NCBI GenBank assembly: GCA_044892525.1
Contig: CM097886.1
Location: 120,032,001-120,096,000, forward strand
Reading direction: 5' to 3'
DNA length: 64,000 bases
DNA from: Schmidtea polychroa
Lineage: Eukaryota
Shown here one piece after another: positions 33,177 through 49,607 of this stretch (position 1 is the stretch's first letter; every line of letters starts with the position of its first letter). Below the pieces are notes generated by a model. That model was not told the DNA's origin, searched no databases, and saw only the letters and a list, made by a program, of their open reading frames with translations. A program made the translations under genes and the position numbers.

Positions 33177-34269
33177 TGTTAGGTTCGATGGGTAGGTAGT
33201 CGAACTAACACAAAAAATGTTCTATCTGACTCCAATAAATAATTTAGGCGTATAGGTAATAAATAAGAAATATGATTTACAATATTTATTAATGATAAAA
33301 ATTACACGATTGTTTATTTGTACAAATTATTCACGCTGCTCTCTGAAGAAAAGAAAACGGTTAATCAAACCGCCCTGAAGAATATTTCTACGAATCAAGG
33401 CTGGCCCTAAATGCGCCAACAGCCCGATATAAGTGAAAGGAAAAAGATAGGGAAACTCACCAAATTTTACGCGATAGAGTCAACCCAGAAATTGGTTAAC
33501 TCTTTAAATTATATTTGACACGAAACAGCTACAAAAAATATGTGCTGACGTTGCAATCCCCTTTTATATTAATTTAAATAAATGAAAATATTTATATGTA
33601 TATATATTTCAAATCAAAAATACTAACTAATTGATTATTCCAACAAGGGTAAGATAAACCACAGATTGGTTGTCGAACTGGCTACTAATATTTCTTCCTT
33701 TTACTTTAATTAATACTCCAATAGGTATTGGAGTTACGATATTATATAGATGATGCGAAAAATCCTGATAAAAATATCCTTTGGTTCCGAAGAATTTCGT
33801 GATAAATATAATTCCAGTAATTAATTTCTTGATCGATATTCCTATGGAAATTTCTTGATCCAATAGACAAAATGAAATTTCCCAAAATTTTAGGTTAAAT
33901 TCTAAATGTCAAGAATGCCGAATTAAAATGATCTGATCGTATCTATTTATAACTATGGGGATTCTCTTCTGATTTTTCTTGTCTCTAATTTCTTATCCTC
34001 CTGTAATCTAATTTTTAACTAGTATTTATATAAATTTTATTTCCATAATTCTATTAATAGTAATTGTTTAATTACTATTTTTATTATATTTTTTAAATAA
34101 TTTCTATAGTTCTATTTTTAGTAATTATTTATTACTAATTATATTTTAGTTTTAATTTTAGTATTTAATTTCTATTTTCGGTAATTTTTTATTACTATTT
34201 TTGTTATACTTCTAATTAATTATTATTTAATTTCGAATCTTCAATTCCGGTTCCTACTGAACCCCAACA
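33177..34269 (-). mobile_element. 3' LTR of the large Gypsy-like element (1093 bp)
   Basis: TGTT...AACA termini, AATG on the outer flank, and an adjacent PPT. Near-identical to 51611-52703. Confidence 0.9.
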
Positions 34270-34281
34270 AGTCTTCCCCCT
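34270..34281 (-). promoter_or_regulatory. Polypurine tract
   Basis: Minus strand reads AGGGGGAAGACT immediately before the LTR's TG. Confidence 0.8.
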
Positions 34282-34571
34282 AACAAGATTTTCGTCCCGA
34301 AAATTAAAGCGGTAAAGATAAGACAATTGCAGCCAATACATAAAATTAAAAAAAATATAAAAATAAAATAAAACAACTGAATAAAATGTATATACATAAA
34401 GTAATCAAAGTCAAACTCAGAGATGGTTAAACAAAATTAAAAATCAGATTTATCAAATGTTGTTCATAATGTCTATCAATTTGAATATCTGGATTGGATT
34501 GAGTTGTCGAAGGTGTTGGGATTGAGGACGTATAGCAAATTGCTAGGTCCATTGAACACATAGCCGAATTG

Positions 34572-36209
34572 CTAGTATTTTCTCCTTTTCATGACCTTGG
34601 CACTTTCGTTACGGATCCTTTGTTCTACAATGTCAGGTCTGTAACTGACCACCAAAGTCTCCCGTGTACTTACCTCTTTGTACACAATTGAGGAGATAAT
34701 GTACGAGCCCTCATTAGCCTCCAATACTCCGTAGTCGGGGAAATTGGATACGGCTACTTCATGGATTGGGCCTCCGTCGTATTCCGTGATACGCGGTTTC
34801 CATTTGCTGTCGGGTCTCTGCCACCAACTAGGATCTTCCCTGTCGAGGTCTTCCCGTATTTTGATTGAATTGCCCCTTCCGACGAACTCGCCTTCCTTTA
34901 CGATAATAGGTTCTCCTGAAATCGTGGGTTCACTCTTTGTTGCCAATATCTTGGTCAACGCAGGATCTGGTGGCTGATAGTGGGTTTCTAGGAGATCGTC
35001 ATCCTCATCTTGGATGGATATCCTAGGCATCTTCTTTTTCGTGCTCTTAGGAATCTCCGTTTTCCTCTTTGTAGAGGTAGGAACATTTTTCTCCTTGTCC
35101 TCTTTCTGGGGGGGTTTCTCCGTTGGTTTCTTTTTAAACTTCAAGTCTTGTAGCTTGAGTAATGGTGCCACAGCTTGGGGTAATGTTCCCCCTTCAGCTC
35201 CTTGTTTGGGTTCACCCAACGGGGCCAATGCTTTCAGGATCTTGGTGACCCGTTCAACTAACTTTTCTGCTGGCTGGGGTTTTTCTACTTCCATTTTAGC
35301 CGAATTCACCACTCTACCGTCATTGGTAAGGGTGACTTGGCGGCAGTTATCGTCTGCACTCTCACAAGTGGCATAGTCGTCTTCATCAGCAATTGAAATG
35401 GCTGGCGGCGACAAGGAATCTTCTTCCACTATTTTCAACAACTTCGTCCTGGGGATATCTTCTTTCACATAGCTCTCCATAGCTAGTGGTTTTTGCCTGC
35501 TTGAGGTACCGGGTTCCATCTGCTTGATTTGTGAAGACACCACCTCTTTCCGGGTGTCCGGTGAAATGTCGTCGACCCAGATGTCTCGTAGGTTATCGTA
35601 AATCTCCTTGATGGTAGTTACATCATTCTCCGTTTGAAGATCCGAGAAATGATGTGCTTCTTTACCGGTGACTGCCTTTGCCAAATATGCCAAACGATAA
35701 TACCCGTTGCATTTCTTTAGGTCCCTACTTTCGAGACATTTAGCTGCGCCTAGCTCACGGATTCCGAGAGCGCGCTGCATTGGGAATCTAATAACTTCTA
35801 GTAGGTCCTTTACTAGCAATCCCACGATGATTTTCCCATCGCAGATTTTCCTGATTCGTTCGGCACAGTCTTCTCCGTCGAACTGTCCTATTATTTCTTT
35901 CTCGGTCATACCATGCGCATGCGATTGGTAATGTTTGACCTGTGCTCTGGGGGTGACTCTCGTGTTGAGTATCAGATCGCCATTGAAATGTGAGATTGAA
36001 ATGGCCACGATTGCCGGTTTCAGGAATTGTCGTAGTGTAGCGTAGTGAGCTGCTACGAAAATGGTGAGGTTATCCTCTTGTCTAGGGTCCAGACGCTGTC
36101 TGACGAAAGACTTAAATGTTTTGATGTCGTTATCGTTGACATTATATGTCCAGTTTGGGTCATTAACCCATCTTGTTTGTGCTTCTCTGTGAGGTTCCAG
36201 GATTTCCAT
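34572..36209 (-). CDS. Accessory ORF (545 aa): DEDDh/REX4-like exonuclease-fold domain with degenerate active site, long charged linker, C-terminal domain ending KRRKY
   Basis: AISISHFNGDLILNTRVTP..QVKHYQSHAHGMT, GKIIVGLLVKDL, RLAYLAKAVTGKE and ENDVTTIKEIY parallel REX4/ISG20 motifs (ARVSIVN.G..LYD.YVKP..VTDYRT..SGI; GRILVGH..NDL; SL..LA...LG; EDA.A.M.LY). The ExoI position reads FVAAHY rather than DxE. Confidence 0.65.
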   Translation of the reverse strand: MEILEPHREAQTRWVNDPNWTYNVNDNDIKTFKSFVRQRLDPRQEDNLTIFVAAHYATLRQFLKPAIVAISISHFNGDLILNTRVTPRAQVKHYQSHAHGMTEKEIIGQFDGEDCAERIRKICDGKIIVGLLVKDLLEVIRFPMQRALGIRELGAAKCLESRDLKKCNGYYRLAYLAKAVTGKEAHHFSDLQTENDVTTIKEIYDNLRDIWVDDISPDTRKEVVSSQIKQMEPGTSSRQKPLAMESYVKEDIPRTKLLKIVEEDSLSPPAISIADEDDYATCESADDNCRQVTLTNDGRVVNSAKMEVEKPQPAEKLVERVTKILKALAPLGEPKQGAEGGTLPQAVAPLLKLQDLKFKKKPTEKPPQKEDKEKNVPTSTKRKTEIPKSTKKKMPRISIQDEDDDLLETHYQPPDPALTKILATKSEPTISGEPIIVKEGEFVGRGNSIKIREDLDREDPSWWQRPDSKWKPRITEYDGGPIHEVAVSNFPDYGVLEANEGSYIISSIVYKEVSTRETLVVSYRPDIVEQRIRNESAKVMKRRKY

Positions 36210-36278
36210 TGCTATGATGGTATCTATACCTTCACATAACAGTGATATGTTCTTTTCCCTTCCGTCCCGGTTTTCTAT

Positions 36279-36734
36279 TTAGAGGGTAGTGTGCTTTTGT
36301 AGCAAAATAGGGTTCGTGGCGCCAGGAACATAAACCGTAATTGGTTTGTTAATGGCGTGTATCCACAGGTGGTTGGTCAGACTATGTCTACCAAACTCAG
36401 GCATGACCTCGGTAAGCCTAATACTACCGTTATGCTTACCCGGGATTCTGGAGATAATCATTTGACGCTTTGGAGCCTCGTCAAATTTGAAATTATTGGG
36501 TATACCTGAACAATGACCGTAAAACCAGTGCCTTTGTCCTTTTCTACCTAGCTCCATAACCTGCTTCTCCAGGTTCTTGTAAATGAGTTTTTCTTTTAGT
36601 AAGGTTGTAGCACGTATAATGCTATGCCTTCCTTGGTATTGGGATATTGGATGGCTCTGCATTCCTGAAATAAAAATCATTAACCATAATATCAGATATA
36701 CTGATATGCCATAATAGGCTAAAAAGATATGCAT
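36279..36734 (-). CDS. Accessory ORF (151 aa), probably secreted
   Basis: ATG start, hydrophobic N-terminus (IFLAYYGISVYLILWLMIFISG), intact frame, same strand as the element. Confidence 0.6.
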   Translation of the reverse strand: MHIFLAYYGISVYLILWLMIFISGMQSHPISQYQGRHSIIRATTLLKEKLIYKNLEKQVMELGRKGQRHWFYGHCSGIPNNFKFDEAPKRQMIISRIPGKHNGSIRLTEVMPEFGRHSLTNHLWIHAINKPITVYVPGATNPILLQKHTTL

Positions 36735-36860
36735 AAGTCTTATAATAAAAGATCTACATATGCTGAATTTTAATGCTACCTGGAGCTCTACGTAAATATA
36801 GATTTTAAGATATATATAAATATTTATATATGATTTTTCCCTCGGGGGAGTCTGTAATTG

Positions 36861-37490
36861 TCATAATTGCGACATCAGTACTCCATCGTAAGCTCTTATG
36901 GCTTGTCTAAAATATAGCTTGGTCCAAATACCCATAGCTATCAGTGTAGTTACCAGCGATAGTACGGCCGATACCGTAATCCATACCCCTACGGGTATTT
37001 TCAGGATATATCCTGCATTAAAGTTTGTGATGGCATTACAATCACAACAGTTTGTCATGTTTGGGGGCGTTTGACAAGATATTTGTTTAATGGGTGACAA
37101 CTGTTTAAGATGTTGCCACATTGCGGGATGTATCACCATGTTCTCCCTGACTACTTTTGGTGGTTTTTCCGTTACAACTGGCTGTTTCAGAGGTAATATC
37201 TCCTCAAATACCTCGAACCACCTATCGTCTTCCCGTTTCCTCGGACTATAGTATATAACTAGAACCGAATATTCTACTGACTGATTTAGATACGTTTCTT
37301 GGGAGGGAGAGTTCTGGTCTAACCATAATGTTCTTCTCGTGGTTGATCCGTTTAGAATGCTGATTTTCACTTTTTCCTCCCTGTTAATTTGCTGGCAAAT
37401 TTTACTTTCTCCTTCTCGTAGGATATCGATATGCGGTTTGTGAAATCTGCCGTCCGTAGGATCCAATTTGATACGTGATAGGTATACCAA
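36861..37490 (-). CDS. ORF overlapping the pol end in the -1 frame: beta-rich ectodomain plus C-terminal TM
   Basis: TM VGVWITVSAVLSLVTTLIAMGIW near the C-terminus, with N-x-S/T sequons (NGS, NQS, NMT). It has no ATG start of its own at the overlap. Confidence 0.7.
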   Translation of the reverse strand: MVYLSRIKLDPTDGRFHKPHIDILREGESKICQQINREEKVKISILNGSTTRRTLWLDQNSPSQETYLNQSVEYSVLVIYYSPRKREDDRWFEVFEEILPLKQPVVTEKPPKVVRENMVIHPAMWQHLKQLSPIKQISCQTPPNMTNCCDCNAITNFNAGYILKIPVGVWITVSAVLSLVTTLIAMGIWTKLYFRQAIRAYDGVLMSQL

Positions 37491-40400
37491 CCATTCCGAT
37501 ATAACCTTGATGCTGCGACATGCAGTTTATAATCCGTCTCGGCTTTTAAGTCATATAAATCCCACTCTTTTTCTTCTGAATCGGGTTGGCGGATCCGCAA
37601 GTACTTGTTGTAGAAATGTAAATTGAATTTTGTGGCATTATCGCATGTTGTGAGTATGCTAATTCCGTGATACGTTCTTATAAAATGTAAGTGTTCCACT
37701 TGCATAGCCATAGGCTGAAAATATGCCTTTCTATCCCTTTTTGCCATTGCTAAAGTCATCATACAGCTTATTATCAGCAAAAAGGTTACCGATTTTGGAA
37801 CACCCCGTGATCTCAATGGGTATCGGTGTTCTTGTGGTTCTTCGGTAGTGTTTGGTTTCACTTGTTTCTCTGGTGCTTTTAGATTTCCAGAGGTTCCCTT
37901 TGTTGAGATTTCGCACTTTTTACACCGATTAGCATGCACCATTATTGGTTCTGCTTTTCTGTTGGCTACAAGTTGTAATATGAGATTTGTGTCTGTGGTT
38001 CTCAATACCTCGTATGGCCCTTTGAAATTTCGCATGAGTTTTGGTGATAAGCCTTTCTTGTTATAATGACTTTCCAACATCACCTGGTCTCCAACCAATA
38101 TGCCATGATCCTTGGCTTTTCGGTCATGATAATCTTTGGATGCCTCCTGATTATATTTTATACTGAGACCTGCTCTAGCCCATGCTTCCTGCATTCTTTC
38201 CCTCATTTCCATTAGATAATCTTCCTGATCTAAATACTGTGTTGCTTTAGGGAAAAACAACAGATCTACTGGCATTTTACTTTGCCTTAGGTACATTAGG
38301 TAAAATGGCGTTTCACCTGTTCCTTCGTGTACTGCATTCCTGTATGCAAATAAACAGGATGGAATGTGGATGTCCCAATCCGTTTGCCCTGAATTTACAT
38401 ATGATGCTAACATATTAGCTAATGTTCCATTAAATCGCTCTACTAGCCCATCCGTCTGTGGGTGATATGGGGAAGTGTTCAACTTTAGAACTCCGAAATA
38501 ATCATTTATTCCTTTGAGCAAATTACTCATGAAATCAGCTCCTCGATCTGTTAATAGCTTCGTAGGTACTCCATACCTAAAGACAATTTGTTCAACGAAA
38601 ATTCTAGCTATTGTATCAGCTTTGTGATTAGGCATCGGGTAGGCTTCTGGCCACTTAGTCAAGTAATCGCAGAACACTAATATGTACTTGTTTCCGCTAT
38701 TAGATTCTTTGAATGGCCCCAACACGTCCATTGCCGTCATTTCCATTGGTGTAGATGGTACTGGCATCGGCTTCATCGGTACGTGTGGTTTCTTTCCGGT
38801 ATTTCTTCTGGTGATACAGATCTTACATGTCTGACACCAGGTTTTAACATCTTGTTTCATACCGGGCCAAAAATATTTTTGTTTTAACCTCGACAATGTT
38901 TTTCTAGATGACAGGTGGCCTCCTAAGGCTCCATCGTGATACTGCAACATGAGTGCTTCACGGTATTTCTTAGGAACCATTATAACGTTATCTCGTATAT
39001 CTGAATATTTAACTAATCCCTCTTCCAGCACAAATTTATCTTTATTCTTTTCCCAGTATTTCGTGAATTCTGTGGGCACGTATTTCGCTTCTAAGGCTTG
39101 TCGGATGGCATTGATTTCTTCATCAGCTTTTTGTGCCTCCATTAAATCAGCTAGCCGGTTGGCTTCTCGAGTCAGTGTGAAGATAGTCCCTTCGAGACGT
39201 CCTTCCTTCACATCTTCTGCTTCCTCCTCCTGGTCCATTCTCGATAAAGCATCTGCATTACCATTATGATCTCCCTTTCTATAATGGATTTCTATGTCAT
39301 ATGGCTGTAAAATTAATGCCCATCTGACCAGTTTTGATGTATCCATTGTGTGTTTCGTCAGCCACTGTAATTGTCTATGATCGGTATACACTATGATCTT
39401 TCGACCCCATAGATAGGTCCTAAACTGGGTTATAGCATATACAATTGCTAAAGCCTCTAGTTCTATCACTGCGTAGTTTCTCTCGTGTGGTTTTAACCCT
39501 CTGCTAGCGTATGCAATTGCATACTCGTCTCCTAGGTCATCTCTCTGACCTAACACAGCACCTATGCCCCGAGTGCTGGCATCTGTCATAACCAAAAATT
39601 GTCTCTCAAAATCTGGGAATCGCAATATAGGTGGCTTGATGAGTCTTTCCTTGAGCCTATCAAATGCTTCTTGCTGTTCTGTTCCCCACACAAATTTGAC
39701 ATTTTTGCCTTCTAACTGCGTGAGTGGGAAAGCTATAACCGAAAAGTTTCTAATGAATTTTCTGTAGTATCCAACTAGACCTAAAAACCCTTTGATATGT
39801 TTAACGGTTTTAGGCTCCGGAAAATTCTTAACCTTTTCAACATTAGCTGGATCGGGTTTAACCCCGTCTCGTGATATGATATGGCCAACATATACCACTT
39901 CTGGTTCAGCCCATTTACATTTGGTTGGTTTAACTTTCATGTTGGCATTGATCAACCTCTTGAACACATCTTCCAAATGTTCCAAGTGTTTTTCCAAATT
40001 TGGCGAGAATACTATGACGTCGTCAATGTATACCATCGCATGATGTACATCCATGAGCATCAAATTCATTGCTCTTTGAAATGTGGCTGGAGCTCCGGTG
40101 AGTCCAAATGGCATTACGTTATATTCGTAATGGCCCATACTCGTAGAAAATGCTGTTATTGGTATAGTCTCATCTTTTAGCTTAATTTGATAAAATCTCT
40201 TTCGGGCGTCCATTACTGAGAAGAACCTAGTGTTTCTCATGCGTCCATAGATATAATCTAACAATGGCAATGGATGGCTATCTTTGCATGTTGCTTCGTT
40301 AACCATGCGATAGTCGTTACATAATCGTACTGATCCATCCTTCTTGGCCACCACTATCATTGGTGATTGATATGGTGATTTACTATGTCTGATTATGCCA

Positions 40401-43400
40401 TGTTTTAACATCAATTTCACCTGTTTATCAACTGATTCCTCCAGACTGAAAGGAATACGGTATGGTCTCAACTTTATAGGTTTTGTATTGGTGAGAACAA
40501 TCTCATGTTCTAACAGGTTTGTTTTTCCCAGATCGTATTCATGTTTCGCGAATACCTGGTCATATTTCCTCAACAGCATATTTACTTGAATGTTTTCCTT
40601 TCTGGTTAGCACTTTGCTATTTGCTGTAGGAGCATCATAGTACTCAATGTCTGGATCTCTTTCTTCTGCCTTTACGGTGAGTATCGACCCTTCTCTCGTG
40701 GCTTGTGGTTCGTTTTGTTTCCAGATTCTGCCCACTCTGGTATCTGGATATAAGTACAGTGGTTTAATGTCCAAATTGGCTACCTTGATTGGTATTCTGC
40801 CATTGACTATTAAACCTACGCTATGCGTAACTGGTATATTGTATTTCTCCGAAAATCTTTCGTCTGGTTCAAATACAACTTCCCCTTCCCAATTATTGCT
40901 TGTAGCTACAAAGCATACTGTTTCTGCTCTGGGTGGTATGATAGTTGTATGATCTATATAAGCTGTATCATCGTTGTAAATTTTTCTCTTTTTACCTCGT
41001 GCTCGGATTAACAATCCAGATGCACAATCGAATACTACTCCTCGTAGTCTTTTTAGAACGTCCATACCCAATAGACATTCGGCTGGGAGGCTTCTCATCA
41101 CTATGATGTCGTGATGGAGCTCCTGGTCACATAGCTTAATCTGGCAGGATAATGACCCTATTACGTTTAATGATGATCCGTTTGCTCCTGTTAATTTTAC
41201 TCCTGCCGGTTTTAGCGACTGCAGTTCATGATGGTTTAACAATTTAGCTTCTATTATGGTACCATCTGCTCCTGAGTCTATCACCGCATTAACTGTATGT
41301 CGGTTCACTCTTATTTTTATCATTGGCTTTTTATCCAAATTCACTGGGTTATTGACCATCAAGATAGAATCGTGCGAGATACCGATTGTATTGGCTCTCG
41401 TTTGTTCTGCTTCCAGTAATTCAGGATCACTCAGTTGAGGATTATACTCTTTAAATTTAGCTTTAATTGATTCTAACGCTTCCTTTGGATAGTGCACTTT
41501 AGGTAATTCTGGCAATGTTGAACATGTCAGATTATTAAATATGGTATCTTCACCGATTTTCCATTGGTGTCGTCCTGTTCTGAGTGTTGTTTCCTTTGAG
41601 TGTTCCCGCCTCTCGTTTGGTGCGGATGGTAAACTCCTCAAAGTTGGCAATTGTACATATCTTGGACTTTTCTTGAATCTGGGTGACCTTATGTCGAATT
41701 TTTGGTCGGAACTGTTATATTCTCCTTCTGGGGACTGTTTTCTCACATAGATTTCCTTTGATTGGTCATACGGAGGAAGATATTCCTTAAATCTCGATTT
41801 TCTTTGTTGCTGATTCGGTTTTTTGTTGTAGTTCTGTTTTCGTGATTGATTTGATCTTGAAGATGTTTCACGAGAGCCTCCATTACCTCCTTCCTTTGAA
41901 TTGTTATCGTCTTGATAACTAGAATACTCCTCCATTTCTGTTCCAATTACTTCATGTTTGACCAAATGTTTCTGTCTAATTTCTTTAATTTCCTTTCTGT
42001 GATGTTTGAATAATGCAAACTCTGCACACATGGGACATAGTCCTAATAGCAGTTTCCATGACCATCCCCCAATTTTGAATATGCTATAAGTTGACATCAG
42101 TTGTGTAATTATCAGCTTTAAAATTACAAATATTGCGTAAATTCCTGAACATCCCGCGACGAAAATACCAAAATTGGTGAATCGTCCCCATATTTTCATC
42201 ATTACGTTCTTTGCTGCTTCTTTATAGTGTTCCGGTCCAAATAATAGATTGTAATCTGGTCGTATTAAGCTATCATGATAAATTGTTCTTATAATTTCCG
42301 TGATACCTCTATCTCTGATTTGTGGGAATAGCAATGTCCTTCTTGCTTCCTCGATATCGTCGGGAGTATAGATCCCTCCTTTTGCTAATTCGTCTAATGA
42401 CTTGAATTCCATATTATCTTTTAATTTAGTTACCTCCAAGGTCTCTACTTGTCGTGTAGATGGTTTTCTTTCTGGAAGAGATATCCACATGTCATTTATT
42501 TTGTATAATGGTGATATTGCCGGGTTGCATATAGCTGGTTGAGGTTTAGCGTTTTCCTCAAGTAACTTTCTGGTTACTGGCATAACAAATCTCAAATTTC
42601 CTTGGTAAGATACTGGCAGTTCTAGAGTGCATTGATTAAATCTGGCTAATTGTACTTCAACTGGTTTACACTCATAGCTATATATAGCTTCTCCCAAGAT
42701 CCTACCAAACATTCCATCTTCCAATAACATTGGAGTAACCAACTCTGTGTTAACAATAGATATTGCTAATCTATTTCGGACTATTTCACGATTTAGCTTG
42801 CAATCATTTAGTATCACCTCTTGATACATATCTTGCATTTGTCCTTGCAGATCATGGTATAGATAATCTACTTTATTATTTATATAATTCGTGATTTTGA
42901 TATCCTTTACATGTAGGACCTTGGAATTCCGAATATATTCTCTTGACAGAAAGATTCCTTTGTAGTTCGTCTCGTATACTCTTTTCCCACATTTAGTCTT
43001 TTTATCTTTTCGGACGAATCGAATTGCTTCCGTCTTGTCTTCCGATATCAATAATAGAGGTGTGTTTTCCTCTCCAATATCTTCCTTCTCTTGTTTGTTG
43101 ATTTTCTTCAACGTTTTTGCTTTATCCCAAACCTTTTCTGGATTCTGAGAATCCCGATATTTAGTTCCATTTAGTTTTCTAAAAGGAATCTTCTTGAGAA
43201 AAGCCAACTCACAATGATCTCTCATTTGTTCGTAAATTAATGTAGTGGTTCCCGTTTTACAACTACCGAACTTGGCATTGCATTGCGGATGTGCCATCAA
43301 TTTTCCTGTGGCCACATCGAATGTTCCCTCGTATTCTCGTAGCTCTACTGAGTAATCTTCTATGTCTACCACATAGGAAACTAAATTGCTACCGCGAATT

Positions 43401-43513
43401 TTCTTTCTTCCTTCGCAGGTTCCATCTGAGGCAATTGTTCCTCCTCGAGTGATTGTTATTCCCAATGTTTTCCCAATTTCTGCTGAGATTGATACCTCGT
43501 TGTCTATCCTCAC
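37367..43513 (-). CDS. 2048-codon polyprotein frame: chuvirus-like glycoprotein, protease, RT, RNase H, integrase, then a signal-like helix and FN3-like extension
   Basis: PR IDSGAD...LLGMD; RT PYRIP, DYR..N, MPFGL, YIDD; RNaseH TDAS, ELE..AI, TDH, ADALSR; IN H-x6-H...CxxC, MDVLGP, LTDRG, VERFN, GPY. Glycoprotein motifs include GEAIY..CKPVEV, C..ELPV and GGIYT. Confidence 0.95.
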   Translation of the reverse strand: MRIDNEVSISAEIGKTLGITITRGGTIASDGTCEGRKKIRGSNLVSYVVDIEDYSVELREYEGTFDVATGKLMAHPQCNAKFGSCKTGTTTLIYEQMRDHCELAFLKKIPFRKLNGTKYRDSQNPEKVWDKAKTLKKINKQEKEDIGEENTPLLLISEDKTEAIRFVRKDKKTKCGKRVYETNYKGIFLSREYIRNSKVLHVKDIKITNYINNKVDYLYHDLQGQMQDMYQEVILNDCKLNREIVRNRLAISIVNTELVTPMLLEDGMFGRILGEAIYSYECKPVEVQLARFNQCTLELPVSYQGNLRFVMPVTRKLLEENAKPQPAICNPAISPLYKINDMWISLPERKPSTRQVETLEVTKLKDNMEFKSLDELAKGGIYTPDDIEEARRTLLFPQIRDRGITEIIRTIYHDSLIRPDYNLLFGPEHYKEAAKNVMMKIWGRFTNFGIFVAGCSGIYAIFVILKLIITQLMSTYSIFKIGGWSWKLLLGLCPMCAEFALFKHHRKEIKEIRQKHLVKHEVIGTEMEEYSSYQDDNNSKEGGNGGSRETSSRSNQSRKQNYNKKPNQQQRKSRFKEYLPPYDQSKEIYVRKQSPEGEYNSSDQKFDIRSPRFKKSPRYVQLPTLRSLPSAPNERREHSKETTLRTGRHQWKIGEDTIFNNLTCSTLPELPKVHYPKEALESIKAKFKEYNPQLSDPELLEAEQTRANTIGISHDSILMVNNPVNLDKKPMIKIRVNRHTVNAVIDSGADGTIIEAKLLNHHELQSLKPAGVKLTGANGSSLNVIGSLSCQIKLCDQELHHDIIVMRSLPAECLLGMDVLKRLRGVVFDCASGLLIRARGKKRKIYNDDTAYIDHTTIIPPRAETVCFVATSNNWEGEVVFEPDERFSEKYNIPVTHSVGLIVNGRIPIKVANLDIKPLYLYPDTRVGRIWKQNEPQATREGSILTVKAEERDPDIEYYDAPTANSKVLTRKENIQVNMLLRKYDQVFAKHEYDLGKTNLLEHEIVLTNTKPIKLRPYRIPFSLEESVDKQVKLMLKHGIIRHSKSPYQSPMIVVAKKDGSVRLCNDYRMVNEATCKDSHPLPLLDYIYGRMRNTRFFSVMDARKRFYQIKLKDETIPITAFSTSMGHYEYNVMPFGLTGAPATFQRAMNLMLMDVHHAMVYIDDVIVFSPNLEKHLEHLEDVFKRLINANMKVKPTKCKWAEPEVVYVGHIISRDGVKPDPANVEKVKNFPEPKTVKHIKGFLGLVGYYRKFIRNFSVIAFPLTQLEGKNVKFVWGTEQQEAFDRLKERLIKPPILRFPDFERQFLVMTDASTRGIGAVLGQRDDLGDEYAIAYASRGLKPHERNYAVIELEALAIVYAITQFRTYLWGRKIIVYTDHRQLQWLTKHTMDTSKLVRWALILQPYDIEIHYRKGDHNGNADALSRMDQEEEAEDVKEGRLEGTIFTLTREANRLADLMEAQKADEEINAIRQALEAKYVPTEFTKYWEKNKDKFVLEEGLVKYSDIRDNVIMVPKKYREALMLQYHDGALGGHLSSRKTLSRLKQKYFWPGMKQDVKTWCQTCKICITRRNTGKKPHVPMKPMPVPSTPMEMTAMDVLGPFKESNSGNKYILVFCDYLTKWPEAYPMPNHKADTIARIFVEQIVFRYGVPTKLLTDRGADFMSNLLKGINDYFGVLKLNTSPYHPQTDGLVERFNGTLANMLASYVNSGQTDWDIHIPSCLFAYRNAVHEGTGETPFYLMYLRQSKMPVDLLFFPKATQYLDQEDYLMEMRERMQEAWARAGLSIKYNQEASKDYHDRKAKDHGILVGDQVMLESHYNKKGLSPKLMRNFKGPYEVLRTTDTNLILQLVANRKAEPIMVHANRCKKCEISTKGTSGNLKAPEKQVKPNTTEEPQEHRYPLRSRGVPKSVTFLLIISCMMTLAMAKRDRKAYFQPMAMQVEHLHFIRTYHGISILTTCDNATKFNLHFYNKYLRIRQPDSEEKEWDLYDLKAETDYKLHVAASRLYRNGWYTYHVSNWILRTADFTNRISISYEKEKVKFASKLTGRKK

Positions 43514-43533
43514 ACTTCCTTTTCGAAATGCAT

Positions 43534-45720
43534 CTAAGCAATCTTTATGTTTACCGGCCTTGGTATTAATGTCGCGGATAGAAAAGCAGAATAGCTATTA
43601 CTACCGCAATAATATTCGAATGTAGCTCTCTGAACTCTACATTCCTTTATCGTAGTTCTATAGAATTCACTTTCTTGGTAGACATAATATTCTACCTTTT
43701 CCCCTTGCTGGACCTTCTCGGGATACGCCTCTTTGCACTCAATTGCATCTACTAGCGAATATACCCGAGATAGTTTAGGGTTTCCACAATCAAATACCGT
43801 TAATGAGTTTGTTTGTTTTAATATGCCCATCATTACTAGGAACATCAGGATCATGCTTGTCATGTTTCCTGTGCCTGAACTAACATTATTTATGGCTTCT
43901 TCCACGACTTCATATCGTGGTTTTGGAATCGTTTCCTTTTCCCAAAATTTGTTTACGGTCATCCATACCTCCAGGTAATAATCTATCATTTCGACTATTT
44001 GATCGATTTCTCGTTCTATAAGCCTTTTATCATCCCCTACTCGGGCTAAGGCATTTTGAATTAACAATGATAGTGATGTTAACACTTTCCCTCTTGTTAA
44101 TCCTTGCTGTACGAATGCTTCTATGGTATCCTGAATATCTCCTGTTGATACATCTTTGGATATTCTATCCATTGTCTTTTTGACTTCCTTTGTTATCTTC
44201 TTAACTTCGATCCCCTTGATTTTTGGAATTCTCCATTCGGGCCTGATAATCCCGATCATTTGTTGTATACGTTGCCACAATAACGACCTTTCTGACGTTG
44301 TCTCGTCTCCCGCCTGGTCGTCCATTTCTTGGGCTATCCCTGCTAATGTTTTTAACTGAATTTTCCGAATCGTTTCCGGATTTAACTGCTCCTTGGGTGG
44401 AGGTTTCATTTGATCCTTTCTAGGACGTCCTCGTCCATCTTTTTTCACTTTCTCCGGAGGTTTTCCAGTCTCCGGGTTTGTTATAGCTTGTGACGTAGTA
44501 GCTCCTACGTTTGTTTCTCCTGGATTTAACCTGACGTACTCTGAGAAGTAATCTTCCTCGTCAATGTCCACCATTTGACAGGGATTAATTTCCTCTAGCC
44601 TTATTTCCTCAATCTCTTCCACAATTTCGTTTGCCATATCTGGCAGTCTCATTAATGACCACTGGGACTCCGGTGGAGTTACTGGGATGATCATTACCGT
44701 GGTTGTTACCAACGGTAGACAACCCACATCCACTAGATACTCATCATCATCAACTTGCCTACCATGAACCATTATCAGGAATATACCTGTAGTTTGATCG
44801 GTGGCAATCTCATCTCTCCTCAATATTTTGACCTTAATATAACAATTATAAATCATTGTTAATGGTTCTTTTCCCATCATTCGCACGTCTAGATTAATGT
44901 TGCCTTGTCTATCAGGCTGACTTCGGATAGCTTTCCCATTTTTCCTCATCAGCGCTTCGATTTGCGTCTGGAATGGGCTTGTTTCCTTTACCACTGGTAG
45001 TATAAGTGGAATTATTGCTTCCAACAAATCTACTGGTATTCGTAATACTAACATCCAGTCCAGTATTTCCTTTATAGTTTCCCCATCTCGTGGAGATTTC
45101 TGCAATTCCAACCCTAGTCGCTGGGTTAATTGTTGAGTTTCTTCCAAACTCTCTATTTCCATTTGAGTAATCAAGAATACGCTATCTTGATCCATTACTG
45201 CTACTGGCTTTTGTGCTCTCTTTGCTGTGAGCTTCGTCACTCTACCTGGGAGTATCCCGTTCTGTAGAAGTGTTTGGTTTGCTTCTAATTTTATTCCACA
45301 TAAGTATAAGTCATATCCTTGATGCTTAATACTTGTCAACGTTTCCGTTAATTTATCGGCTCGACTTCTTACATTTATATCGAGATTATACTCTCTATCC
45401 TGTGGGAGTTTTATATTGAGCTGGGCATCTTGGAGATCCCACTCATGTTCCATGAGTTTTCCTAATTTCCTTAGGATTTTGTACGTGTCGTTATGATATT
45501 TTGGATCATCTTCGACCTGCGATATCAGTTTTACTACTGTATCGATTTCATGAATTTTAATTTCTGTTTCTCCCAATTTTCCCAATTGTCTGGCCAGCTT
45601 CTGCTGGTACTCATATCTGGAATCCACCAGTTTTAAACATTTTGTTAGGGTATCTGACCCTTCTTTTACCTTTGCTTTCCCTGGCAAGGTTCTATCGAAC
45701 TCGCTTAGTATGGTGGCCAT
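43534..45720 (-). CDS. 728-aa ORF: accessory domains (death-fold-like, ubiquitin-like, AT-hook, Bcl-2-like), internal signal peptide and glycoprotein N-terminus
   Basis: ATG start and intact frame. MILMFLVMMGILKQTNS|LTVFDC followed by a Cys-rich ECRVQR..YYCGSNSYS that continues into the next ORF's glycoprotein via a -1 shift. Confidence 0.85.
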   Translation of the reverse strand: MATILSEFDRTLPGKAKVKEGSDTLTKCLKLVDSRYEYQQKLARQLGKLGETEIKIHEIDTVVKLISQVEDDPKYHNDTYKILRKLGKLMEHEWDLQDAQLNIKLPQDREYNLDINVRSRADKLTETLTSIKHQGYDLYLCGIKLEANQTLLQNGILPGRVTKLTAKRAQKPVAVMDQDSVFLITQMEIESLEETQQLTQRLGLELQKSPRDGETIKEILDWMLVLRIPVDLLEAIIPLILPVVKETSPFQTQIEALMRKNGKAIRSQPDRQGNINLDVRMMGKEPLTMIYNCYIKVKILRRDEIATDQTTGIFLIMVHGRQVDDDEYLVDVGCLPLVTTTVMIIPVTPPESQWSLMRLPDMANEIVEEIEEIRLEEINPCQMVDIDEEDYFSEYVRLNPGETNVGATTSQAITNPETGKPPEKVKKDGRGRPRKDQMKPPPKEQLNPETIRKIQLKTLAGIAQEMDDQAGDETTSERSLLWQRIQQMIGIIRPEWRIPKIKGIEVKKITKEVKKTMDRISKDVSTGDIQDTIEAFVQQGLTRGKVLTSLSLLIQNALARVGDDKRLIEREIDQIVEMIDYYLEVWMTVNKFWEKETIPKPRYEVVEEAINNVSSGTGNMTSMILMFLVMMGILKQTNSLTVFDCGNPKLSRVYSLVDAIECKEAYPEKVQQGEKVEYYVYQESEFYRTTIKECRVQRATFEYYCGSNSYSAFLSATLIPRPVNIKIA

Positions 45721-45917
45721 ACTAGGTTCATCATCGGAACTCTCTCTGATTCCGTTTCCTGAAGGTCCTCTCTAACGGAGTCCTTTTTTCTGAGAAATTC
45801 ATCTCTTCCAACTTCTACCATAAAAATGGTGCCTTCTTGGTCGGTTAATCTAGCCAACCTATTCTTTTCCTCCTGGATTTCCATTTCCAGTTGTTGCAGA
45901 TAAGTTAACCCTTGATC

Positions 45918-46234
45918 CTAGTTAACCATAAAAGTTGTCTTAGGCTTGTTCACATTACCCTTATCGGTATTTTTATTGAACTGACCCGTATTTCCACTCT
46001 GATTCTGAGGACATGACCTCATCATATGTCCGAATTTCCCACATCCGTGACATTTTATCTTTCCTGATGAATTTACATCATCTCTTTTAATTGTACTAAA
46101 ATTATTGCTGTTCTGAGGGCTTCTAGTCTTGCAGACTGCAGCCACATGTCCCTTACGTTTACATTTTTCGCATTGCAAATTCTGCACTCTACAATTTTCC
46201 GCACCGTGGTTATTCCGTCCACATTTGGTACATT
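45918..46234 (-). CDS. gag: C-terminal fragment of Gag with three CCHC zinc knuckles
   Basis: CTKCGRNNHGAENC, CEKCKRKGHVAAVC and CHGCGKFGHMMRSC (each Cx2Cx4Hx4C), with TAG at 45918-45920. Sequence beyond 46234 is Merlin-derived. Confidence 0.9.
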
Positions 46235-47394
46235 GCATTTTTATCCTGCCAGTACCGAACCGTAAAGCCGAAACCATTGCGGCCATATTTATTGGAAATA
46301 TACACCCTGGATCAATTGTCATTACAGATCAGTGGCATTCTTATGGAAGAGTATGTCGAGAATTAAATGTATTCATGCACCAAACCGTTAACCATTCTGT
46401 CAACTTCGTTGATCCATGCGACCCAACAATCCATACTCAAAACATTGAGGGACTATGGTCACGTTCAAAATACTTTATTCGAAAAAAAGAGGCGTTTCAA
46501 GTGAGATTCAATCGGAATATTTAGTACAATTTATTTGGGAATACAACATTGCAAAAAATAAGAGATTTAATGATTTGTTGATCTTATTAAACCATTCTTG
46601 ATTCACGGATAAAAAATTATGGATTTTATTTAATTTTTGTATAAGCAAATATTTTTTTAATTGCAGTGTTTTTAATTTTATAATTAAGTTATATTGATTT
46701 ATTAATTTAATTTATTACTTTATTTTTTAACATAGTAAATTACCATTAACATAGTGAAACTACCATCTACCATATTTTCTTATCAATTCCTTAAATCCTT
46801 TACTGTAAACTCCCCATAAACACTAAATTCCTGTATTGTTGTGCAAATCCATTAAGAAATTAATTCGAATCTGAAATATAAACTCCAAATCTTTTAAACC
46901 AATTTATTAGCATAAAATATTTTCCTGAAAACCCATTAATAAAACAAAGATTCACAAAATTTCAAAAGAAAATCAATTGAAGGCAAAACATATAATACCC
47001 TTCAACACAGAAGTAAAAAAATTATTTAGGCACATAATGAAAGTGTTAGGTTTGCAAGTTGGTTAGAGTACTAACACACTCACTCGATCTGACTCCAAGG
47101 ATATATGTAAGATAAATCAGAACAACAACTCGACTTTTATATAAAACTATTTATTGATATGAAAGATAAATACAAAATATGGATTTAATTAGAAAGTTTA
47201 AAATAACAATAAAACGTGTTGCCCAAAAAAGTTGTTGCAAATAAGCAGAAAATAGATTTAGGTTAAACAAACCTTCCTAAGATATTTCTAAGGCGACGAA
47301 TACAGGATTCTAATTAATAGACAACACCGCTCAACAATATAAGAGGGTTGCCCGAAATTTACTGCGATCGATTAGTAATCAGAAATTGGTAGTA
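46235..47394 (+). repeat. Third, partial copy of 30637-31796 (Merlin 3' half ending at 46771, flank, LTR fragment)
   Basis: Near-identical at offset 15598, with a few private substitutions (e.g. TGGCATTC vs TGGCGTTC). Confidence 0.95.
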
Positions 47395-48369
47395 GTATTT
47401 AAAACAAGAATTCATCCGAAAACTAAAACTGCTTCATATTAAAAGTCCCAAAAATAAGTGAAACTGACATTTCAAATCATATGTAGGGAAAACTTTTTTT
47501 TTGTTACTTGTTTAAATATTTGGTAAAAATTTCATTAAAAAATCTGTTCATTTTCTGTACTGATTTTCAAAGCAAACTAATTGATGTGGAATAATTCAAT
47601 ATGAGAAGAAATCATTGAAGTGAAAAAGATTTTAAGAAAATTTCAGTATCAGTAATTAATTAGGAAAATTTTTACACTTTGAATTTGTAATGGGATAAAT
47701 CTTTTGTATTCCTTTGAACATCCTTGATTTTCAAATTCTTGAATAAGTATGATGGAACTTTGATAATTTACCCTTTTGAGCCGCATATCTTTATTGTCAT
47801 TTACCCCCCAACATCTCTTGTTGCAAAGGGAGCTTTTAGTATCAGAATAATTTAATTTGATATAGATTAAGCGCTAAACATAAATTAAAATCATAAAATT
47901 TTACCTATAAAATTTGATTCTGAAACACGAGGTACAAAAATTCATGGTAAAAAATTGTAAATGATTTGAGAGGGAAGACTCCATTGAAGAACCCCTCCCC
48001 GTGTCGTTAAATGTCTAGTTGGAGTTATTATTTTCAAATTGACGCATATTAATGAAAAATACTTGATTAAGAAAATAACAGCAAAAGTTTTACTTGAAAA
48101 TTAGGACAAAATTTTGACTTTCAAAAAGATTTTACCCTTCAAATTTGCATTATTAGACAATAGAAATCCCTATTTAAACAAAAACCATTTTGAAAATAAA
48201 GGGTAAGTAATTTAAAAAAAGTGTTGGATGATCTGATCTAAAATTATTACATCTTTTTCATAATTATTCATTTTTATTTCTGATCAATTGATAATTTGTA
48301 CAATTAATTTATTAATATAAATATACAACTCTTTAAATACATATGCCAATAGGAATCATTAATATTTTC

Positions 48370-49607
48370 GGTAAATAGTAGATTTACTATGTTAATGGTA
48401 ATTTACTATGTTAAAAAATAAAGTAATAAATTAAATTAATAAATCAATATAAATTAATTATAAATTTACAAAAATTAGCACATCCATGCCAAAACAAACA
48501 CAATTCTTTATAATTCCGAAGCAGTCAATTCTTTCAGACGACGAAGTACGTGCCATAAATATTAACGAAAACTATCTCGACAATGTGTTTCTTGATCATA
48601 CCAATACAAATGAATTTTTAGCCTGCTTTGGTCTGATACAGAATTTTAAACTGTGTAAACGATGCGAAAACCGGCATTTACGGTATGTTAAAAATATGAA
48701 TTATGTGGATGGTTATCACTGGTTATCAGACATGTCGATATCAGGAATCTATTCGTGCAAACTCTTTCATTGTGAAAAGTAAGATGAACACAAAAAACTT
48801 TTTATCGTTATATGAAAGGGGAAGAATTACAAGACATTAGTTATGAATTGAATATTGAAAGACATACCGTTTCGAGTTAGGTTTCGTTGCTTCGTGAGGC
48901 AATGATATATTATTTATCAGCAAATTTTAGTATTCTGGGCGGAGTTGGTAATAATGGACAATCAAAAATTGTTGAGGTTGACGAGACTTTATTCTTCCGG
49001 TGAAAATATAATCGAGGACAGATGTTGAATCAGCGATGGTATATCGGGGGTATTGAACGTGGGACAAGAAGCATTTTTATCCTGCCAGTACCGAACCGTA
49101 AAGCCGAAACCATTGCGGCCATATTTATTGGAAATATACACCCTGGATCAATTGTCATTACAGATCAGTGGCGTTCTTATGGAAGAGTATGTCGAGAATT
49201 AAATGTATTCATGCACCAAACCGTTAACCATTCTGTCAACTTCGTTGATCCATGCGACCCAACAATCCATACTCAAAACATTGAGGGACTATGGTCACGT
49301 TCAAAATACTTTATTCGAAAAAAAGAGGCGTTTCAAGTGAGATTCAATCGGAATATTTAGTACAATTTATTTGGGAATACAACATTGCAAAAAATAAGAG
49401 ATTTAATGATTTGTTGATCTTATTAAACCATTCTTGATTCACGGATAAAAAATTATGGATTTTATTTAATTTTTGTATAAGCAAATATTTTTTTAATTGC
49501 AGTGTTTTTAATTTTATAATTAAGTTATATTGATTTATTAATTTAATTTATTACTTTATTTTTTAACATAGTAAATTACCATTAACATAGTGAAACTACC
49601 ATCTACC
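48370..49607 (+). mobile_element. Merlin transposon, duplicate copy
   Basis: Same TIRs, ATATTTTC TSD and broken transposase as 29936-31173. Confidence 0.92.

What the first reader, a model, noticed from the sequence alone, without database searches (positions are those of the whole stretch)
33177..46234. Gypsy-type retroelement organised like a complex enveloped virus, with env before pol and several accessory genes
Seen: one minus-strand unit running gag(3xCCHC), 600-aa accessory region, signal peptide, glycoprotein, PR-RT-RH-IN, second signal peptide/ectodomain/TM, 151-aa secreted ORF, 545-aa ORF, PPT, 1.09-kb LTR. More than 10 kb of coding sequence has no premature stops. Known: errantiviruses and other env-bearing Ty3/Gypsy elements carry env downstream of pol, and chuviral glycoprotein capture is best known from BEL/Pao elements. 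Inference: this is an infectious-retrovirus-like lineage with two membrane proteins and apoptosis/innate-immunity modulators. I know of no described element with this layout.
Basis: partly seen in the sequence, partly recalled or inferred. Interest (0 to 1): 0.92.

Follow-up and report, generated by a model that had tools for sequence, protein, structure and literature searches.

The report
Defective env-before-pol Gypsy retroelement copy
This is a broken copy of an enveloped-virus-like Gypsy retroelement whose glycoprotein gene lies between gag and pol; that layout is already published for planarian Burro elements and related flatworm elements, so it is a new member of a known kind, not a new kind.

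Summary
The minus-strand unit is real. It is a Ty3/Gypsy LTR element (RT-RNase H closest to Ty3, E 5e-80). A Monjiviricetes/chuvirus-type fusion glycoprotein (Pfam PF24664, E 4e-67) sits between gag and PR-RT-RH-IN.

This copy is dead:
- gag is cut off at 46234 by a rearrangement.
- The glycoprotein and the post-integrase membrane module each carry one frame change.
- The '151-aa' and '545-aa' ORFs are two halves of one ISG20-like exonuclease gene. One stop splits it, and 4 of 5 catalytic residues are lost.

At least 14 protein clusters from other assemblies show G and pol in one protein. Where checked, the order is collinear: gag, X, G, PR-RT-RH-IN, membrane module, often as one 2,700-3,200-aa ORF. 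Three of four relatives with readable DNA also carry the exonuclease-like gene. So the layout is a family trait, not a nested insertion.

The layout is not new. Planarian Burro/GYPSM1 (2019) and GAG-ENV-POL elements of flatworms, bryozoans and nematodes (2023/2026) are published. No apoptosis or immunity domain was detected. The exonuclease-like gene and the second membrane module look undescribed.

The parts
33177..34269 (-). 3' LTR, 1,093 bp, TG..CA termini
   Evidence: Self-BLAST and boundary reading. It differs from the LTR copy at 51611-52703 at 5 positions.
34270..34281 (-). Polypurine tract directly upstream of the 3' LTR
   Evidence: Read from the sequence.
34572..36662 (-). Exonuclease-like accessory gene (exoL), ~695 codons. 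Broken by one in-frame stop. It has an ISG20-type DEDDh fold with 4 of 5 catalytic residues replaced, then a disordered lysine/glutamate-rich tail.
   Evidence: HMMER found 72 homologues, several of which hit Pfam RNase_T. The family profile matches ISG20L2 (E 6e-26) and ISG20. The AF2 model has pLDDT >90 for aa 20-220, and Foldseek's top hits are ISG20L2 and ISG20 at TM 0.81-0.82. Catalytic columns were counted. The upstream open stretch matches profile positions 9-108 and the downstream one continues at position 110.
36861..45720 (-). Giant polyprotein gene X-G-PR-RT-RH-IN-M2. Broken by two frame changes, one in G and one in M2.
   Evidence: ORF lists and frame map. It is collinear with the single 3,181-aa ORF of P0001 and with loci L001, L002, L004 and L005.
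43864..45720 (-). Region X, ~620 aa between gag and the glycoprotein, fold unknown
   Evidence: No Pfam or PDB match. About 24-25% identity to the same position in P0001, P0004 and P0013. The AF2 model is poor at pLDDT 39. There are only weak ubiquitin-like hints.
41927..43863 (-). Envelope glycoprotein G: leader, ectodomain, membrane anchor. Monjiviricetes/chuvirus-type fusion glycoprotein. Contains one frame change.
   Evidence: PF24664 model positions 4-98 and 256-624 are matched by two pieces (E 1.6e-09 and 4.4e-67). 33-39% identity to G of relatives, where it is continuous. Hydrophobic anchor found.
41039..41335 (-). Retropepsin (PR)
   Evidence: PF13975 and PF00077.
39875..40348 (-). Reverse transcriptase
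   Evidence: PF00078. The best solved relative is Ty3 RT/RNase H, 4ol8, E 4.7e-80.
39299..39688 (-). RNase H
   Evidence: PF17917 and PF17919.
38411..38977 (-). Integrase (H2C2 zinc domain plus catalytic core)
   Evidence: PF17921 and PF00665.
36861..37801 (-). M2: second membrane module fused to the end of integrase (leader-like segment, ~250-aa ectodomain, anchor, ~29-aa tail). Contains one frame change.
   Evidence: Hydropathy and the same topology in P0001. Two post-integrase hydrophobic segments in 6 of 9 relatives. Weak similarity to the leader and start of the Ig domain of P0026 (E 6e-05). Ig domains at this place in P0024 and P0026.
45918..46234 (-). gag remnant: nucleocapsid part with three CCHC knuckles. 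The capsid part, leader and primer-binding site are missing.
   Evidence: It aligns to P0001 residues 237-316 only, and no other gag fragment lies in the window.
46235..51610 (.). Foreign block between the gag break and the upstream LTR. It holds a 1,160-bp partial copy of host flank (46235-47394), one base, then a 4,215-bp copy of the flank that lies outside the 3' LTR (47396-51610 = 28962-33176).
   Evidence: Self-BLAST: a 5,309-bp duplicate at 99.8% identity and three copies of the 1,160-bp piece.
51611..52703 (-). Second (upstream) LTR copy
   Evidence: AATG lies immediately before 33177 and immediately after 52703, a candidate 4-bp target-site duplication.

Best explanation
**What it is.** This is a defective, 5'-truncated genomic copy of an endogenous-retrovirus-like Ty3/Gypsy element. 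It is of the GAG-ENV-POL (Burro-like) kind and sits in an AT-rich animal genome.

**Intact layout, as read from relatives.**
- gag (capsid plus three zinc knuckles).
- One giant ORF that encodes, in order: a fast-evolving ~600-aa region X; a leader, class-III-type RNA-virus glycoprotein and membrane anchor; PR-RT-RNase H-IN; and a second leader, ectodomain and anchor (M2).
- A separate ISG20-type exonuclease-like gene, then the polypurine tract and LTR.

**How it most likely works (inferred).**
- The giant ORF is made as a membrane-threaded polyprotein. Gag/X stay in the cytosol. The first internal leader puts the G ectodomain into the ER lumen. The G anchor returns the chain to the cytosol for PR-RT-RH-IN. 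The second leader and anchor do the same for M2.
- Signal peptidase and the retropepsin(s) then separate the parts. Enzymes and envelope proteins are thus delivered to the same membrane.
- The exonuclease-like protein acts as an auxiliary nucleic-acid-binding or processing factor.

**What is shown.** Domain identities, their order, conservation of that order in relatives, and the defects of this copy.

**State of this copy.** It cannot do any of this. It lacks the capsid part of gag and the primer-binding site, G and M2 are each frame-broken once, and exoL has one premature stop and a dead active site.
For: - Domain calls.
- Ty3 is the closest solved RT-RH.
- LTRs, purine tract and AATG duplication.
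- P0001 carries gag knuckles, X, G, PR, RT, RH, IN and M2 collinearly in one 3,181-aa ORF.
- 14 clusters have PF24664 and pol in one protein.
- Collinearity in L001, L002, L004 and L005.
- LTR-like repeats 15-16 kb apart in L002 and L004.
- An exonuclease-like ORF downstream of pol in L002, L004 and L005.
- The exonuclease fold and the lost catalytic residues.
- The 151-aa and 545-aa ORFs are one gene.
- Post-integrase leader plus anchor in most relatives, with Ig domains in two.
- Published precedent for env in frame between gag and pol: PMC6431247. For GAG-ENV-POL elements: PMC13524379.
Against: - The polyprotein-threading step is inference from ORF continuity and hydropathy. No RNA or protein data exist, and spliced subgenomic mRNAs could serve G, M2 or exoL instead.
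- No 2A-like peptide was found, and cleavage sites are not defined.
- X and the M2 ectodomain have no assigned fold.
- Direct sequence comparison with Burro/GYPSM1 or with the published flatworm elements was not possible with these tools.
- The host is unidentified.
- The block between gag and the upstream LTR could be an assembly artefact. In that case the 5' truncation may not exist in the animal.
Confidence: 0.8

Rival explanations
1. The envelope, M2 and exoL proteins come from spliced subgenomic mRNAs, as in retroviruses and as for the CERV protein of Cer1. Gag-Pol is then made from a message that skips X-G. The shared reading frame would be incidental.
For: Cer1, a Gypsy element reported as sister to a flatworm env-carrying element, makes an accessory protein from a five-exon spliced mRNA (PMC10309623; PMC13524379). 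G and M2 each start with their own methionine-led hydrophobic leader. In L001, L002 and the window gag is a separate ORF.
Against: In nine or more relatives X-G-PR-RT-RH-IN-M2 stays open in one frame over 2,600-3,200 codons. Selection need not preserve that if the parts were read from separate messages. No transcript data were available.
Confidence: 0.35
2. The copy is functional after all. The three frame changes, all in the -1 direction, are programmed ribosomal frameshifts or one-base assembly errors, and the stops are read through.
For: All three frame changes go the same way. L002 also has a -1 overlap between gag and the giant ORF, so the gag/X offset may be natural.
Against: G and M2 are continuous in every relative examined. 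The overlap zones hold no long homopolymer of the kind that long-read assemblies miscount. The capsid part of gag, the leader and the primer-binding site are absent from the whole window. exoL is interrupted inside a region that aligns without interruption in its homologues.
Confidence: 0.07
3. One-off nested event: a chuvirus-derived endogenous viral element, or other foreign DNA, landed inside an ordinary Gypsy element at this locus.
For: Chuvirus-type glycoprotein fragments are common endogenous viral elements (PMC7642597, PMC10084718).
Against: The same order, with G in the same ORF as pol, recurs in 14 protein clusters only 41-57% identical in pol. It is collinear residue by residue with P0001. 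No repeat or target duplication flanks the G block.
Confidence: 0.02
4. It is a BEL/Pao element with a captured chuviral glycoprotein, like the mosquito elements.
For: Same glycoprotein family and the same PR-RT-RH-IN order (PMC7642597).
Against: RT-RH is closest to Ty3 (E 5e-80), far ahead of any other solved RT. The Pfam hits are the Ty3/Gypsy-typical RT_RNaseH and Integrase_H2C2, with no BEL/Pao peptidase A17. Named database relatives are Gypsy-type. In the mosquito elements the glycoprotein follows pol.
Confidence: 0.02

Closest known systems
Burro / GYPSM1 giant Gypsy-like LTR retrotransposons of planarians (Jurka 2007; Grohme et al. 2018; Arkhipova & Yushenova 2019, PMC6431247)
   Same: Gypsy-type PR-RT-RH-IN. 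Gag with three CCHC knuckles. A long extra region between gag and env. An env that hits mononegavirus-type fusion glycoproteins and lies between gag and pol within the polyprotein. Further accessory ORFs or domains. An AT-rich host.
   Different: Burro exceeds 30 kb with a ~4,900-aa ORF1. This family is ~15-16 kb. Pfam found no MATH, SUMO-like, BCL2-like, BIR or dUTPase domain here; ankyrin repeats occur only in some relatives. The ISG20-like gene and the post-integrase membrane module are not mentioned for Burro. Sequence relatedness could not be tested.
GAG-ENV-POL Ty3/gypsy 'errantiviruses' of Platyhelminthes, Bryozoa and Nematoda (Chary & Hayashi, eLife 2026, PMC13524379; preprint 2023)
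   Same: The order gag, env, pol in a Ty3/gypsy backbone. Env of the class III (herpes gB-like) kind; that paper states chuvirus-like glycoproteins are structurally gB-like and also occur next to gypsy pol. Multicopy elements with LTRs.
   Different: That survey scored only GAG, ENV and POL and says it did not search for other ORF arrangements. It reports no second membrane protein and no exonuclease gene. Whether this family is in their set is unknown, because the supplements were not available.
Mosquito BEL/Pao elements with Chuviridae-like glycoprotein (Dezordi et al. 2020, PMC7642597)
   Same: Capture of the same glycoprotein family by an LTR retroelement.
   Different: A different retroelement superfamily, with the glycoprotein downstream of pol.
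Bdelloid rotifer Vesta/Juno LTR elements with a DEDDy exonuclease ORF3 (Rodriguez et al. 2017, PMC5408684)
   Same: A DnaQ-like 3'-5' exonuclease-fold gene placed after pol as an accessory ORF of a Gypsy-like element. Its role is likewise unknown.
   Different: The rotifer genes are RNase D-like DEDDy type. Here the gene is ISG20/RNase T-like DEDDh type. In this copy, and in about a third of homologues, the catalytic residues are lost.
Cer1 of Caenorhabditis elegans (PMC10309623)
   Same: A Gypsy element with gag and pol in one uninterrupted polyprotein, as in P0001, and an accessory coding region after integrase.
   Different: Cer1 has no glycoprotein. Its accessory protein CERV is made by splicing and has no exonuclease fold reported.

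Membership tests
Ty3/Gypsy (Metaviridae) LTR retroelements | pol domain order PR-RT-RNase H-IN | tested here: met
   Pfam positions 727-825, 1056-1213, 1276-1405 and 1513-1701 in one ORF.
Ty3/Gypsy (Metaviridae) LTR retroelements | RT/RNase H closer to Ty3/Gypsy than to other reverse-transcribing groups | tested here: met
   Ty3 4ol8 and 7q5b at E ~5e-80, against caulimovirus 1e-48 and retroviruses 1e-26 or weaker. No formal phylogeny was built.
Ty3/Gypsy (Metaviridae) LTR retroelements | Direct LTRs with TG..CA ends, a 4-6 bp target duplication and a polypurine tract | tested here: met
   Two 1,093-bp LTRs differing at 5 positions, AATG on both outer sides, and a purine tract before the 3' LTR. 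The interior next to the upstream LTR is rearranged.
Ty3/Gypsy (Metaviridae) LTR retroelements | tRNA primer-binding site after the 5' LTR and a gag with a capsid domain | tested here: not met
   Both are absent from this copy because of the truncation. Relatives L001, L002 and P0011 have Retrotrans_gag capsid domains.
GAG-ENV-POL env-carrying Ty3/gypsy elements | An envelope fusion glycoprotein gene located between gag and pol | tested here: met
   PF24664 lies between the CCHC knuckles and PR. The same holds in P0001 and L001-L005.
GAG-ENV-POL env-carrying Ty3/gypsy elements | Env with the class III (gB-like) fold | not tested
   Membership of PF24664 rests on sequence alone. No solved structure matches by sequence, and no model of G was made. 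The gB-likeness of this glycoprotein family is taken from PMC13524379.
Burro / GYPSM1 | Env inside the polyprotein between gag and pol, and three CCHC knuckles | tested here: met
   Three knuckles. In P0001 and P0011 gag, env and pol share one ORF. In the window gag and the giant ORF are in different frames.
Burro / GYPSM1 | Giant size (>30 kb) and MATH, SUMO-like, BCL2-like, BIR, ankyrin and dUTPase domains | tested here: not met
   The family is ~15-16 kb. None of these Pfam domains occurs in the window's proteins. There are only weak ubiquitin-like hints.
Burro / GYPSM1 | Sequence similarity to the Repbase entries | not testable with these tools
   No access to Repbase or Dfam or to planarian genomes.
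Monjiviricetes (mononega/chuvirus-type) fusion glycoproteins, PF24664 | Score above the Pfam gathering threshold over most of the model, with leader and membrane anchor | tested here: met
   226.9 and 36.7 bits against a cut-off of 27. Model positions 4-98 and 256-624 of 653 are covered by the two pieces. Leader and anchor are seen. The gene is frame-broken once.
DEDDh 3'-5' exonucleases (ISG20 / RNase T, PF00929) | DnaQ-like fold | tested here: met
   The family profile matches ISG20L2 at E 5.7e-26. Foldseek TM is 0.81-0.82 to ISG20L2 and ISG20.
DEDDh 3'-5' exonucleases (ISG20 / RNase T, PF00929) | The five catalytic residues D, E, D, H, D | tested here: not met
   The window protein keeps only the last D. 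14-16 of 24 homologues keep each residue. It has the fold of the family but is not an active member.
BEL/Pao | BEL/Pao-type RT and peptidase A17 | tested here: not met
   No such Pfam hit. Ty3 is the nearest RT.

The most novel reading that the evidence does not exclude
This compact Burro-like family may be a widespread lineage of invertebrate enveloped retroelements whose expression strategy has not been described. One membrane-threaded polyprotein would carry Gag-side domains, an RNA-virus fusion glycoprotein, the replication enzymes and a second, Ig-like surface protein. A captured ISG20-type exonuclease gene drifts between active-looking and catalytically dead forms. That would be a retroelement analogue of the exonucleases that some RNA viruses use against host sensing, or a decoy for host DEDDh restriction factors.
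Probability: 0.25. Interest if true: 0.6.

Novelty: new member of a known kind. Interest (0 to 1): 0.4.

Why it matters
The element adds a compact, well-delimited example to the recently recognised class of Gypsy elements that carry an RNA-virus glycoprotein ahead of pol.

Comparison with its relatives brings out two family features that the papers I could read do not mention:
- A second membrane-protein module fused to integrase.
- An ISG20-type exonuclease-like gene after pol.

Both are directly testable by descriptive work (transcripts, peptides, distribution). They bear on how retroelements assemble virus-like gene sets from host and viral parts.

For genome annotation, the result shows that the '151-aa' and '545-aa' ORFs should be annotated as one pseudogene. 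It also shows that the locus contains a 5.3-kb duplication that needs checking against raw reads.

Tried and rejected
Searches that gave nothing or too little:
- The exact-sequence look-up of the 545-aa ORF found nothing. Its word-based homologue search also found nothing. Only the full HMMER scan found relatives.
- The G-alignment scan of metagenome contigs gave no confirmed locus.
- The contigs of P0001, P0024 and P0122 had no DNA available. P0121 sits on a 2-kb contig with no context.
- The AlphaFold model of region X was too poor (pLDDT 39) to send to Foldseek.
- Pfam on four sub-pieces of X at E up to 10 gave nothing usable. A ubiquitin-like reading of X therefore stays a weak lead.
- No solved structure matches G or X by sequence.
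- The supplements of the eLife survey are not held, and Grohme et al. 2018 is not held.

Readings considered and rejected:
- A 5.3-kb 'giant LTR' reading of the duplicate. Its outer flanks share no target duplication, while the 1,093-bp LTRs do.
- Read-through between pol and exoL. Relatives have 10-21 in-frame stops there.
- Homopolymer assembly error as the cause of the frame changes. This is not supported.
- 2A-like peptides. None were found.

The host species could not be identified. The best database identity is 57% in pol.

Full report
**Observation**

The region stands out by composition: ~40% GC between 34 and 46 kb, in a window that is otherwise 21-33% GC. On the minus strand the ORF list gives a 134-aa ORF, then ORFs of 728, 2,048, 209, 151 and 545 aa.

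Pfam assigns the following:
- Zinc knuckles to the first ORF. A pattern scan finds exactly three CCHC motifs.
- PF24664, the Monjiviricetes fusion glycoprotein, to the end of the 728-aa ORF (model positions 4-98) and the start of the 2,048-aa ORF (positions 256-624, E 4e-67).
- Retropepsin, RT, RNase H and integrase further along the 2,048-aa ORF.

The unit ends in a purine tract and a 1,093-bp LTR with TG..CA termini.

**State of this copy**

A frame map shows that gag, the 728-aa ORF, the 2,048-aa ORF and the 209-aa ORF lie in successive frames, each shifted in the same direction.

Counted against relatives in which the same stretch is continuous:
- The glycoprotein gene has one frame change.
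- The post-integrase membrane module has one frame change.
- The exonuclease-like gene has one in-frame stop.
- gag is truncated at its 5' side. It also ends in a stop that may or may not be its natural terminator.

The gag-to-X frame offset may be natural, since locus L002 has the same kind of overlap. The overlap zones hold no long homopolymers, so a simple long-read miscount is not indicated.

The statement 'more than 10 kb without premature stops' is true only piece by piece.

**Ends and context**

Self-comparison gives the following picture:
- 28962-34270 is repeated at 47396-52704 (5,309 bp, 10 differences).
- A 1,160-bp piece of that block also lies at 46235-47394, directly against the gag break.
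- The repeat consists of the LTR plus 4.2 kb of host flank. A second LTR therefore lies at 51611-52703.
- AATG precedes 33177 and follows 52703, a candidate 4-bp target duplication for one insertion spanning 33177-52703.

The outer ends of the 5.3-kb repeat share no such duplication, so I reject a 'giant LTR' reading.

Between gag and the upstream LTR, the leader, primer-binding site and capsid half of gag are replaced by copies of the neighbouring flank. No other fragment of the element lies in the window. Either a replication-type rearrangement or an assembly or haplotype artefact would fit. I cannot tell which.

The copied flank holds two things:
- A decayed IS1595/Merlin-type transposase (PF12762).
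- An ORF that joins a Ras/Rab N-terminal half to a proteasome-subunit fragment.

**Relatives**

A search restricted to long proteins containing the glycoprotein part found P0001. It is a 3,181-aa single ORF on a 12-kb contig, followed by a 585-aa ORF.

P0001 is collinear with the window's pieces: knuckles, X, G, PR-RT-RH-IN and the first part of the post-integrase region. It ends with a leader-like segment, ~265 aa, an anchor and a short tail. This is the same topology as the window's post-integrase pieces.

A search with the pol part returned 14 clusters with PF24664 and pol in one protein. They are 41-57% identical in pol and come from environmental or unbinned assemblies.

Four contigs with DNA were examined (L001, L002, L004, L005):
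- All are collinear with the window.
- L002 and L004 have LTR-like repeats 15-16 kb apart.
- Three of the four carry, after pol, an ORF homologous to the window's 545-aa ORF. The fourth carries an ankyrin-repeat ORF.

The order is thus a lineage trait, and the one-off nested-insertion reading is refuted.

**The exonuclease-like gene**

- A full HMMER scan with the 545-aa ORF found 72 homologues, matching its residues ~18-232.
- Several of them reach Pfam RNase_T.
- A profile of 25 members matches ISG20L2 (E 6e-26), ISG20 and SDN1 among solved structures.
- An AlphaFold model is confident for residues 20-220 and disordered beyond. Foldseek ranks ISG20L2 and ISG20 first, at TM 0.81-0.82.
- Column counts show that 14-16 of 24 homologues keep each of the DEDDh residues. 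The window protein keeps only the last aspartate.
- Homologues carry ~150 residues before the domain, which the 545-aa ORF lacks. The open stretch just upstream, which contains the 151-aa ORF and lies in the same frame after a single stop, matches exactly that N-terminal part (profile positions 9-108, E 5e-17; BLASTP down to 9e-14). The downstream stretch continues at profile position 110.
- The homologues' first residues align with the 25th codon of the 151-aa ORF, so its hydrophobic start is probably untranslated.

The two ORFs are therefore one ~695-codon pseudogene. This is comparable with the 684- and 691-aa genes of L002 and L005.

**The second membrane module and region X**

- Six of nine G-pol relatives have two hydrophobic segments after integrase, 130-290 residues apart.
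- P0024 and P0026 have an Ig domain there.
- The window's leader and the first part of its ectodomain resemble that part of P0026 weakly (E 6e-05).
- Some relatives also carry extra retropepsin-like domains after G and after integrase. The window does not.
- Region X is conserved only at ~24% identity. It has no Pfam or PDB match and modelled poorly.
- A ubiquitin-like element is hinted at: UBX at E 0.006 in P0001 and ubiquitin at E 0.33 with the X profile. This is not established.
- No apoptosis- or immunity-related domain was found anywhere in the element.

**Mechanism**

Shown: the identities and order of the parts, and their conservation.

Inferred: because the whole stretch from X (in P0001 and P0011 from gag) to M2 is one ORF in many relatives, I favour translation as one polyprotein that crosses the ER membrane four times by way of two internal leaders and two anchors. 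Signal peptidase and the retropepsin(s) would cut it.

The rival is splicing to subgenomic messages, as in retroviruses and Cer1 (PMC10309623). I give it about one chance in three.

The role of the exonuclease-like protein is unknown. Loss of catalytic residues in a third of the family points to a binding role rather than a cutting role in those members.

**Comparison with what is known**

- The RT-RH is closest to Ty3, and the domain order and LTR features fit Ty3/Gypsy.
- Arkhipova & Yushenova 2019 (PMC6431247) describe planarian Burro/GYPSM1. It has a Gag with three knuckles, extra domains, and an env that hits mononegavirus fusion glycoproteins. [quoted passage not shown]
- Chary & Hayashi (PMC13524379) report GAG-ENV-POL Ty3/gypsy elements in Platyhelminthes, Bryozoa and Nematoda. 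They also report chuvirus-like glycoproteins next to gypsy pol.
- Rodriguez et al. 2017 (PMC5408684) report DEDDy exonuclease ORFs after pol in rotifer elements.

The layout that earned the high first-stage score is therefore published.

This family differs from Burro in three ways: its size (~15-16 kb), the absence of Burro's named accessory domains, and the presence of the DEDDh-type gene and the M2 module. A literature search found no description of those two features.

I file the element as a new member of a known kind, with moderate interest.

Before I had understood that the ORF ends coincide with the frame changes, I recorded ORF and open-frame bounds.

Every query ended at the end of its own frame.

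Noticed in passing
window 28962-34270 and 47396-52704; also 30637-31796, 46235-47394, 49071-50230: A 5,309-bp block (LTR plus host flank) is present twice at 99.8% identity, and a 1,160-bp sub-piece three times. Differences are denser in the LTR part (5 in 1,094) than in the flank part (5 in 4,215). It is either a real template-switch rearrangement or an assembly/haplotype artefact.
   Followed up: partly
window 30019-30923 (+), with copies in the duplicates: A decayed IS1595/Merlin-type DDE transposase (PF12762, E 3e-10), split over at least two frames. The 1,160-bp repeat starts in the middle of it, so that repeat is not a mobile unit of its own.
   Followed up: partly
window 31829-32437 (-), copy at 50263-50871: A 203-aa ORF whose first half is a Ras/Rab GTPase (PF00071, E 2e-34) and whose second half is a proteasome-subunit fragment (PF00227, E 3e-15). 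It is a chimeric pseudogene or captured gene fragments.
   Followed up: no
L001 17000-24948 and L002 1-3000: The metagenome contigs that carry relatives switch abruptly from 24-40% GC (element and AT-rich flank) to 55-77% GC with bacterial-type genes (luciferase-like, MnhB, MacB/ABC, TetR). They look like chimeric assemblies from one ENA sample (ERZ25039515).
   Followed up: partly
L001 9177-9446, 14082-14375, 15298-15564; L002 13358-13630 and 17660-18000; L005 3306-3578 and 7623-7950: Relatives carry additional retropepsin-like domains after the glycoprotein anchor, after integrase and, in L001, inside the downstream ankyrin ORF. These are up to four protease-like domains per element. The window element has one.
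   Followed up: partly
P0005, P0018 and L001 14902-17118: Close pol relatives carry ankyrin repeats, in the polyprotein or in the ORF after pol, where others carry the exonuclease-like gene. Accessory modules seem to be exchanged within the family.
   Followed up: no
L004 16872-18689: A protein-primed type B DNA polymerase ORF (PF03175), typical of Maverick/Polinton elements, lies just outside the LTR-like repeat of the relative.
   Followed up: no
P0021: A 2,627-aa G-pol protein of this eukaryotic family is deposited at NCBI under a Flavobacteriaceae metagenome bin. This is presumably a binning error.
   Followed up: no
window 24408-24665 and 25623-25857; 11142-11361: An inverted repeat pair (~80% identity) next to an N gap, and a short tandem array. 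No ORF with a Pfam match lies in the rest of the window (22958-23941, 2760-3212, 15602-16063 and 24139-24543 were tested).
   Followed up: no
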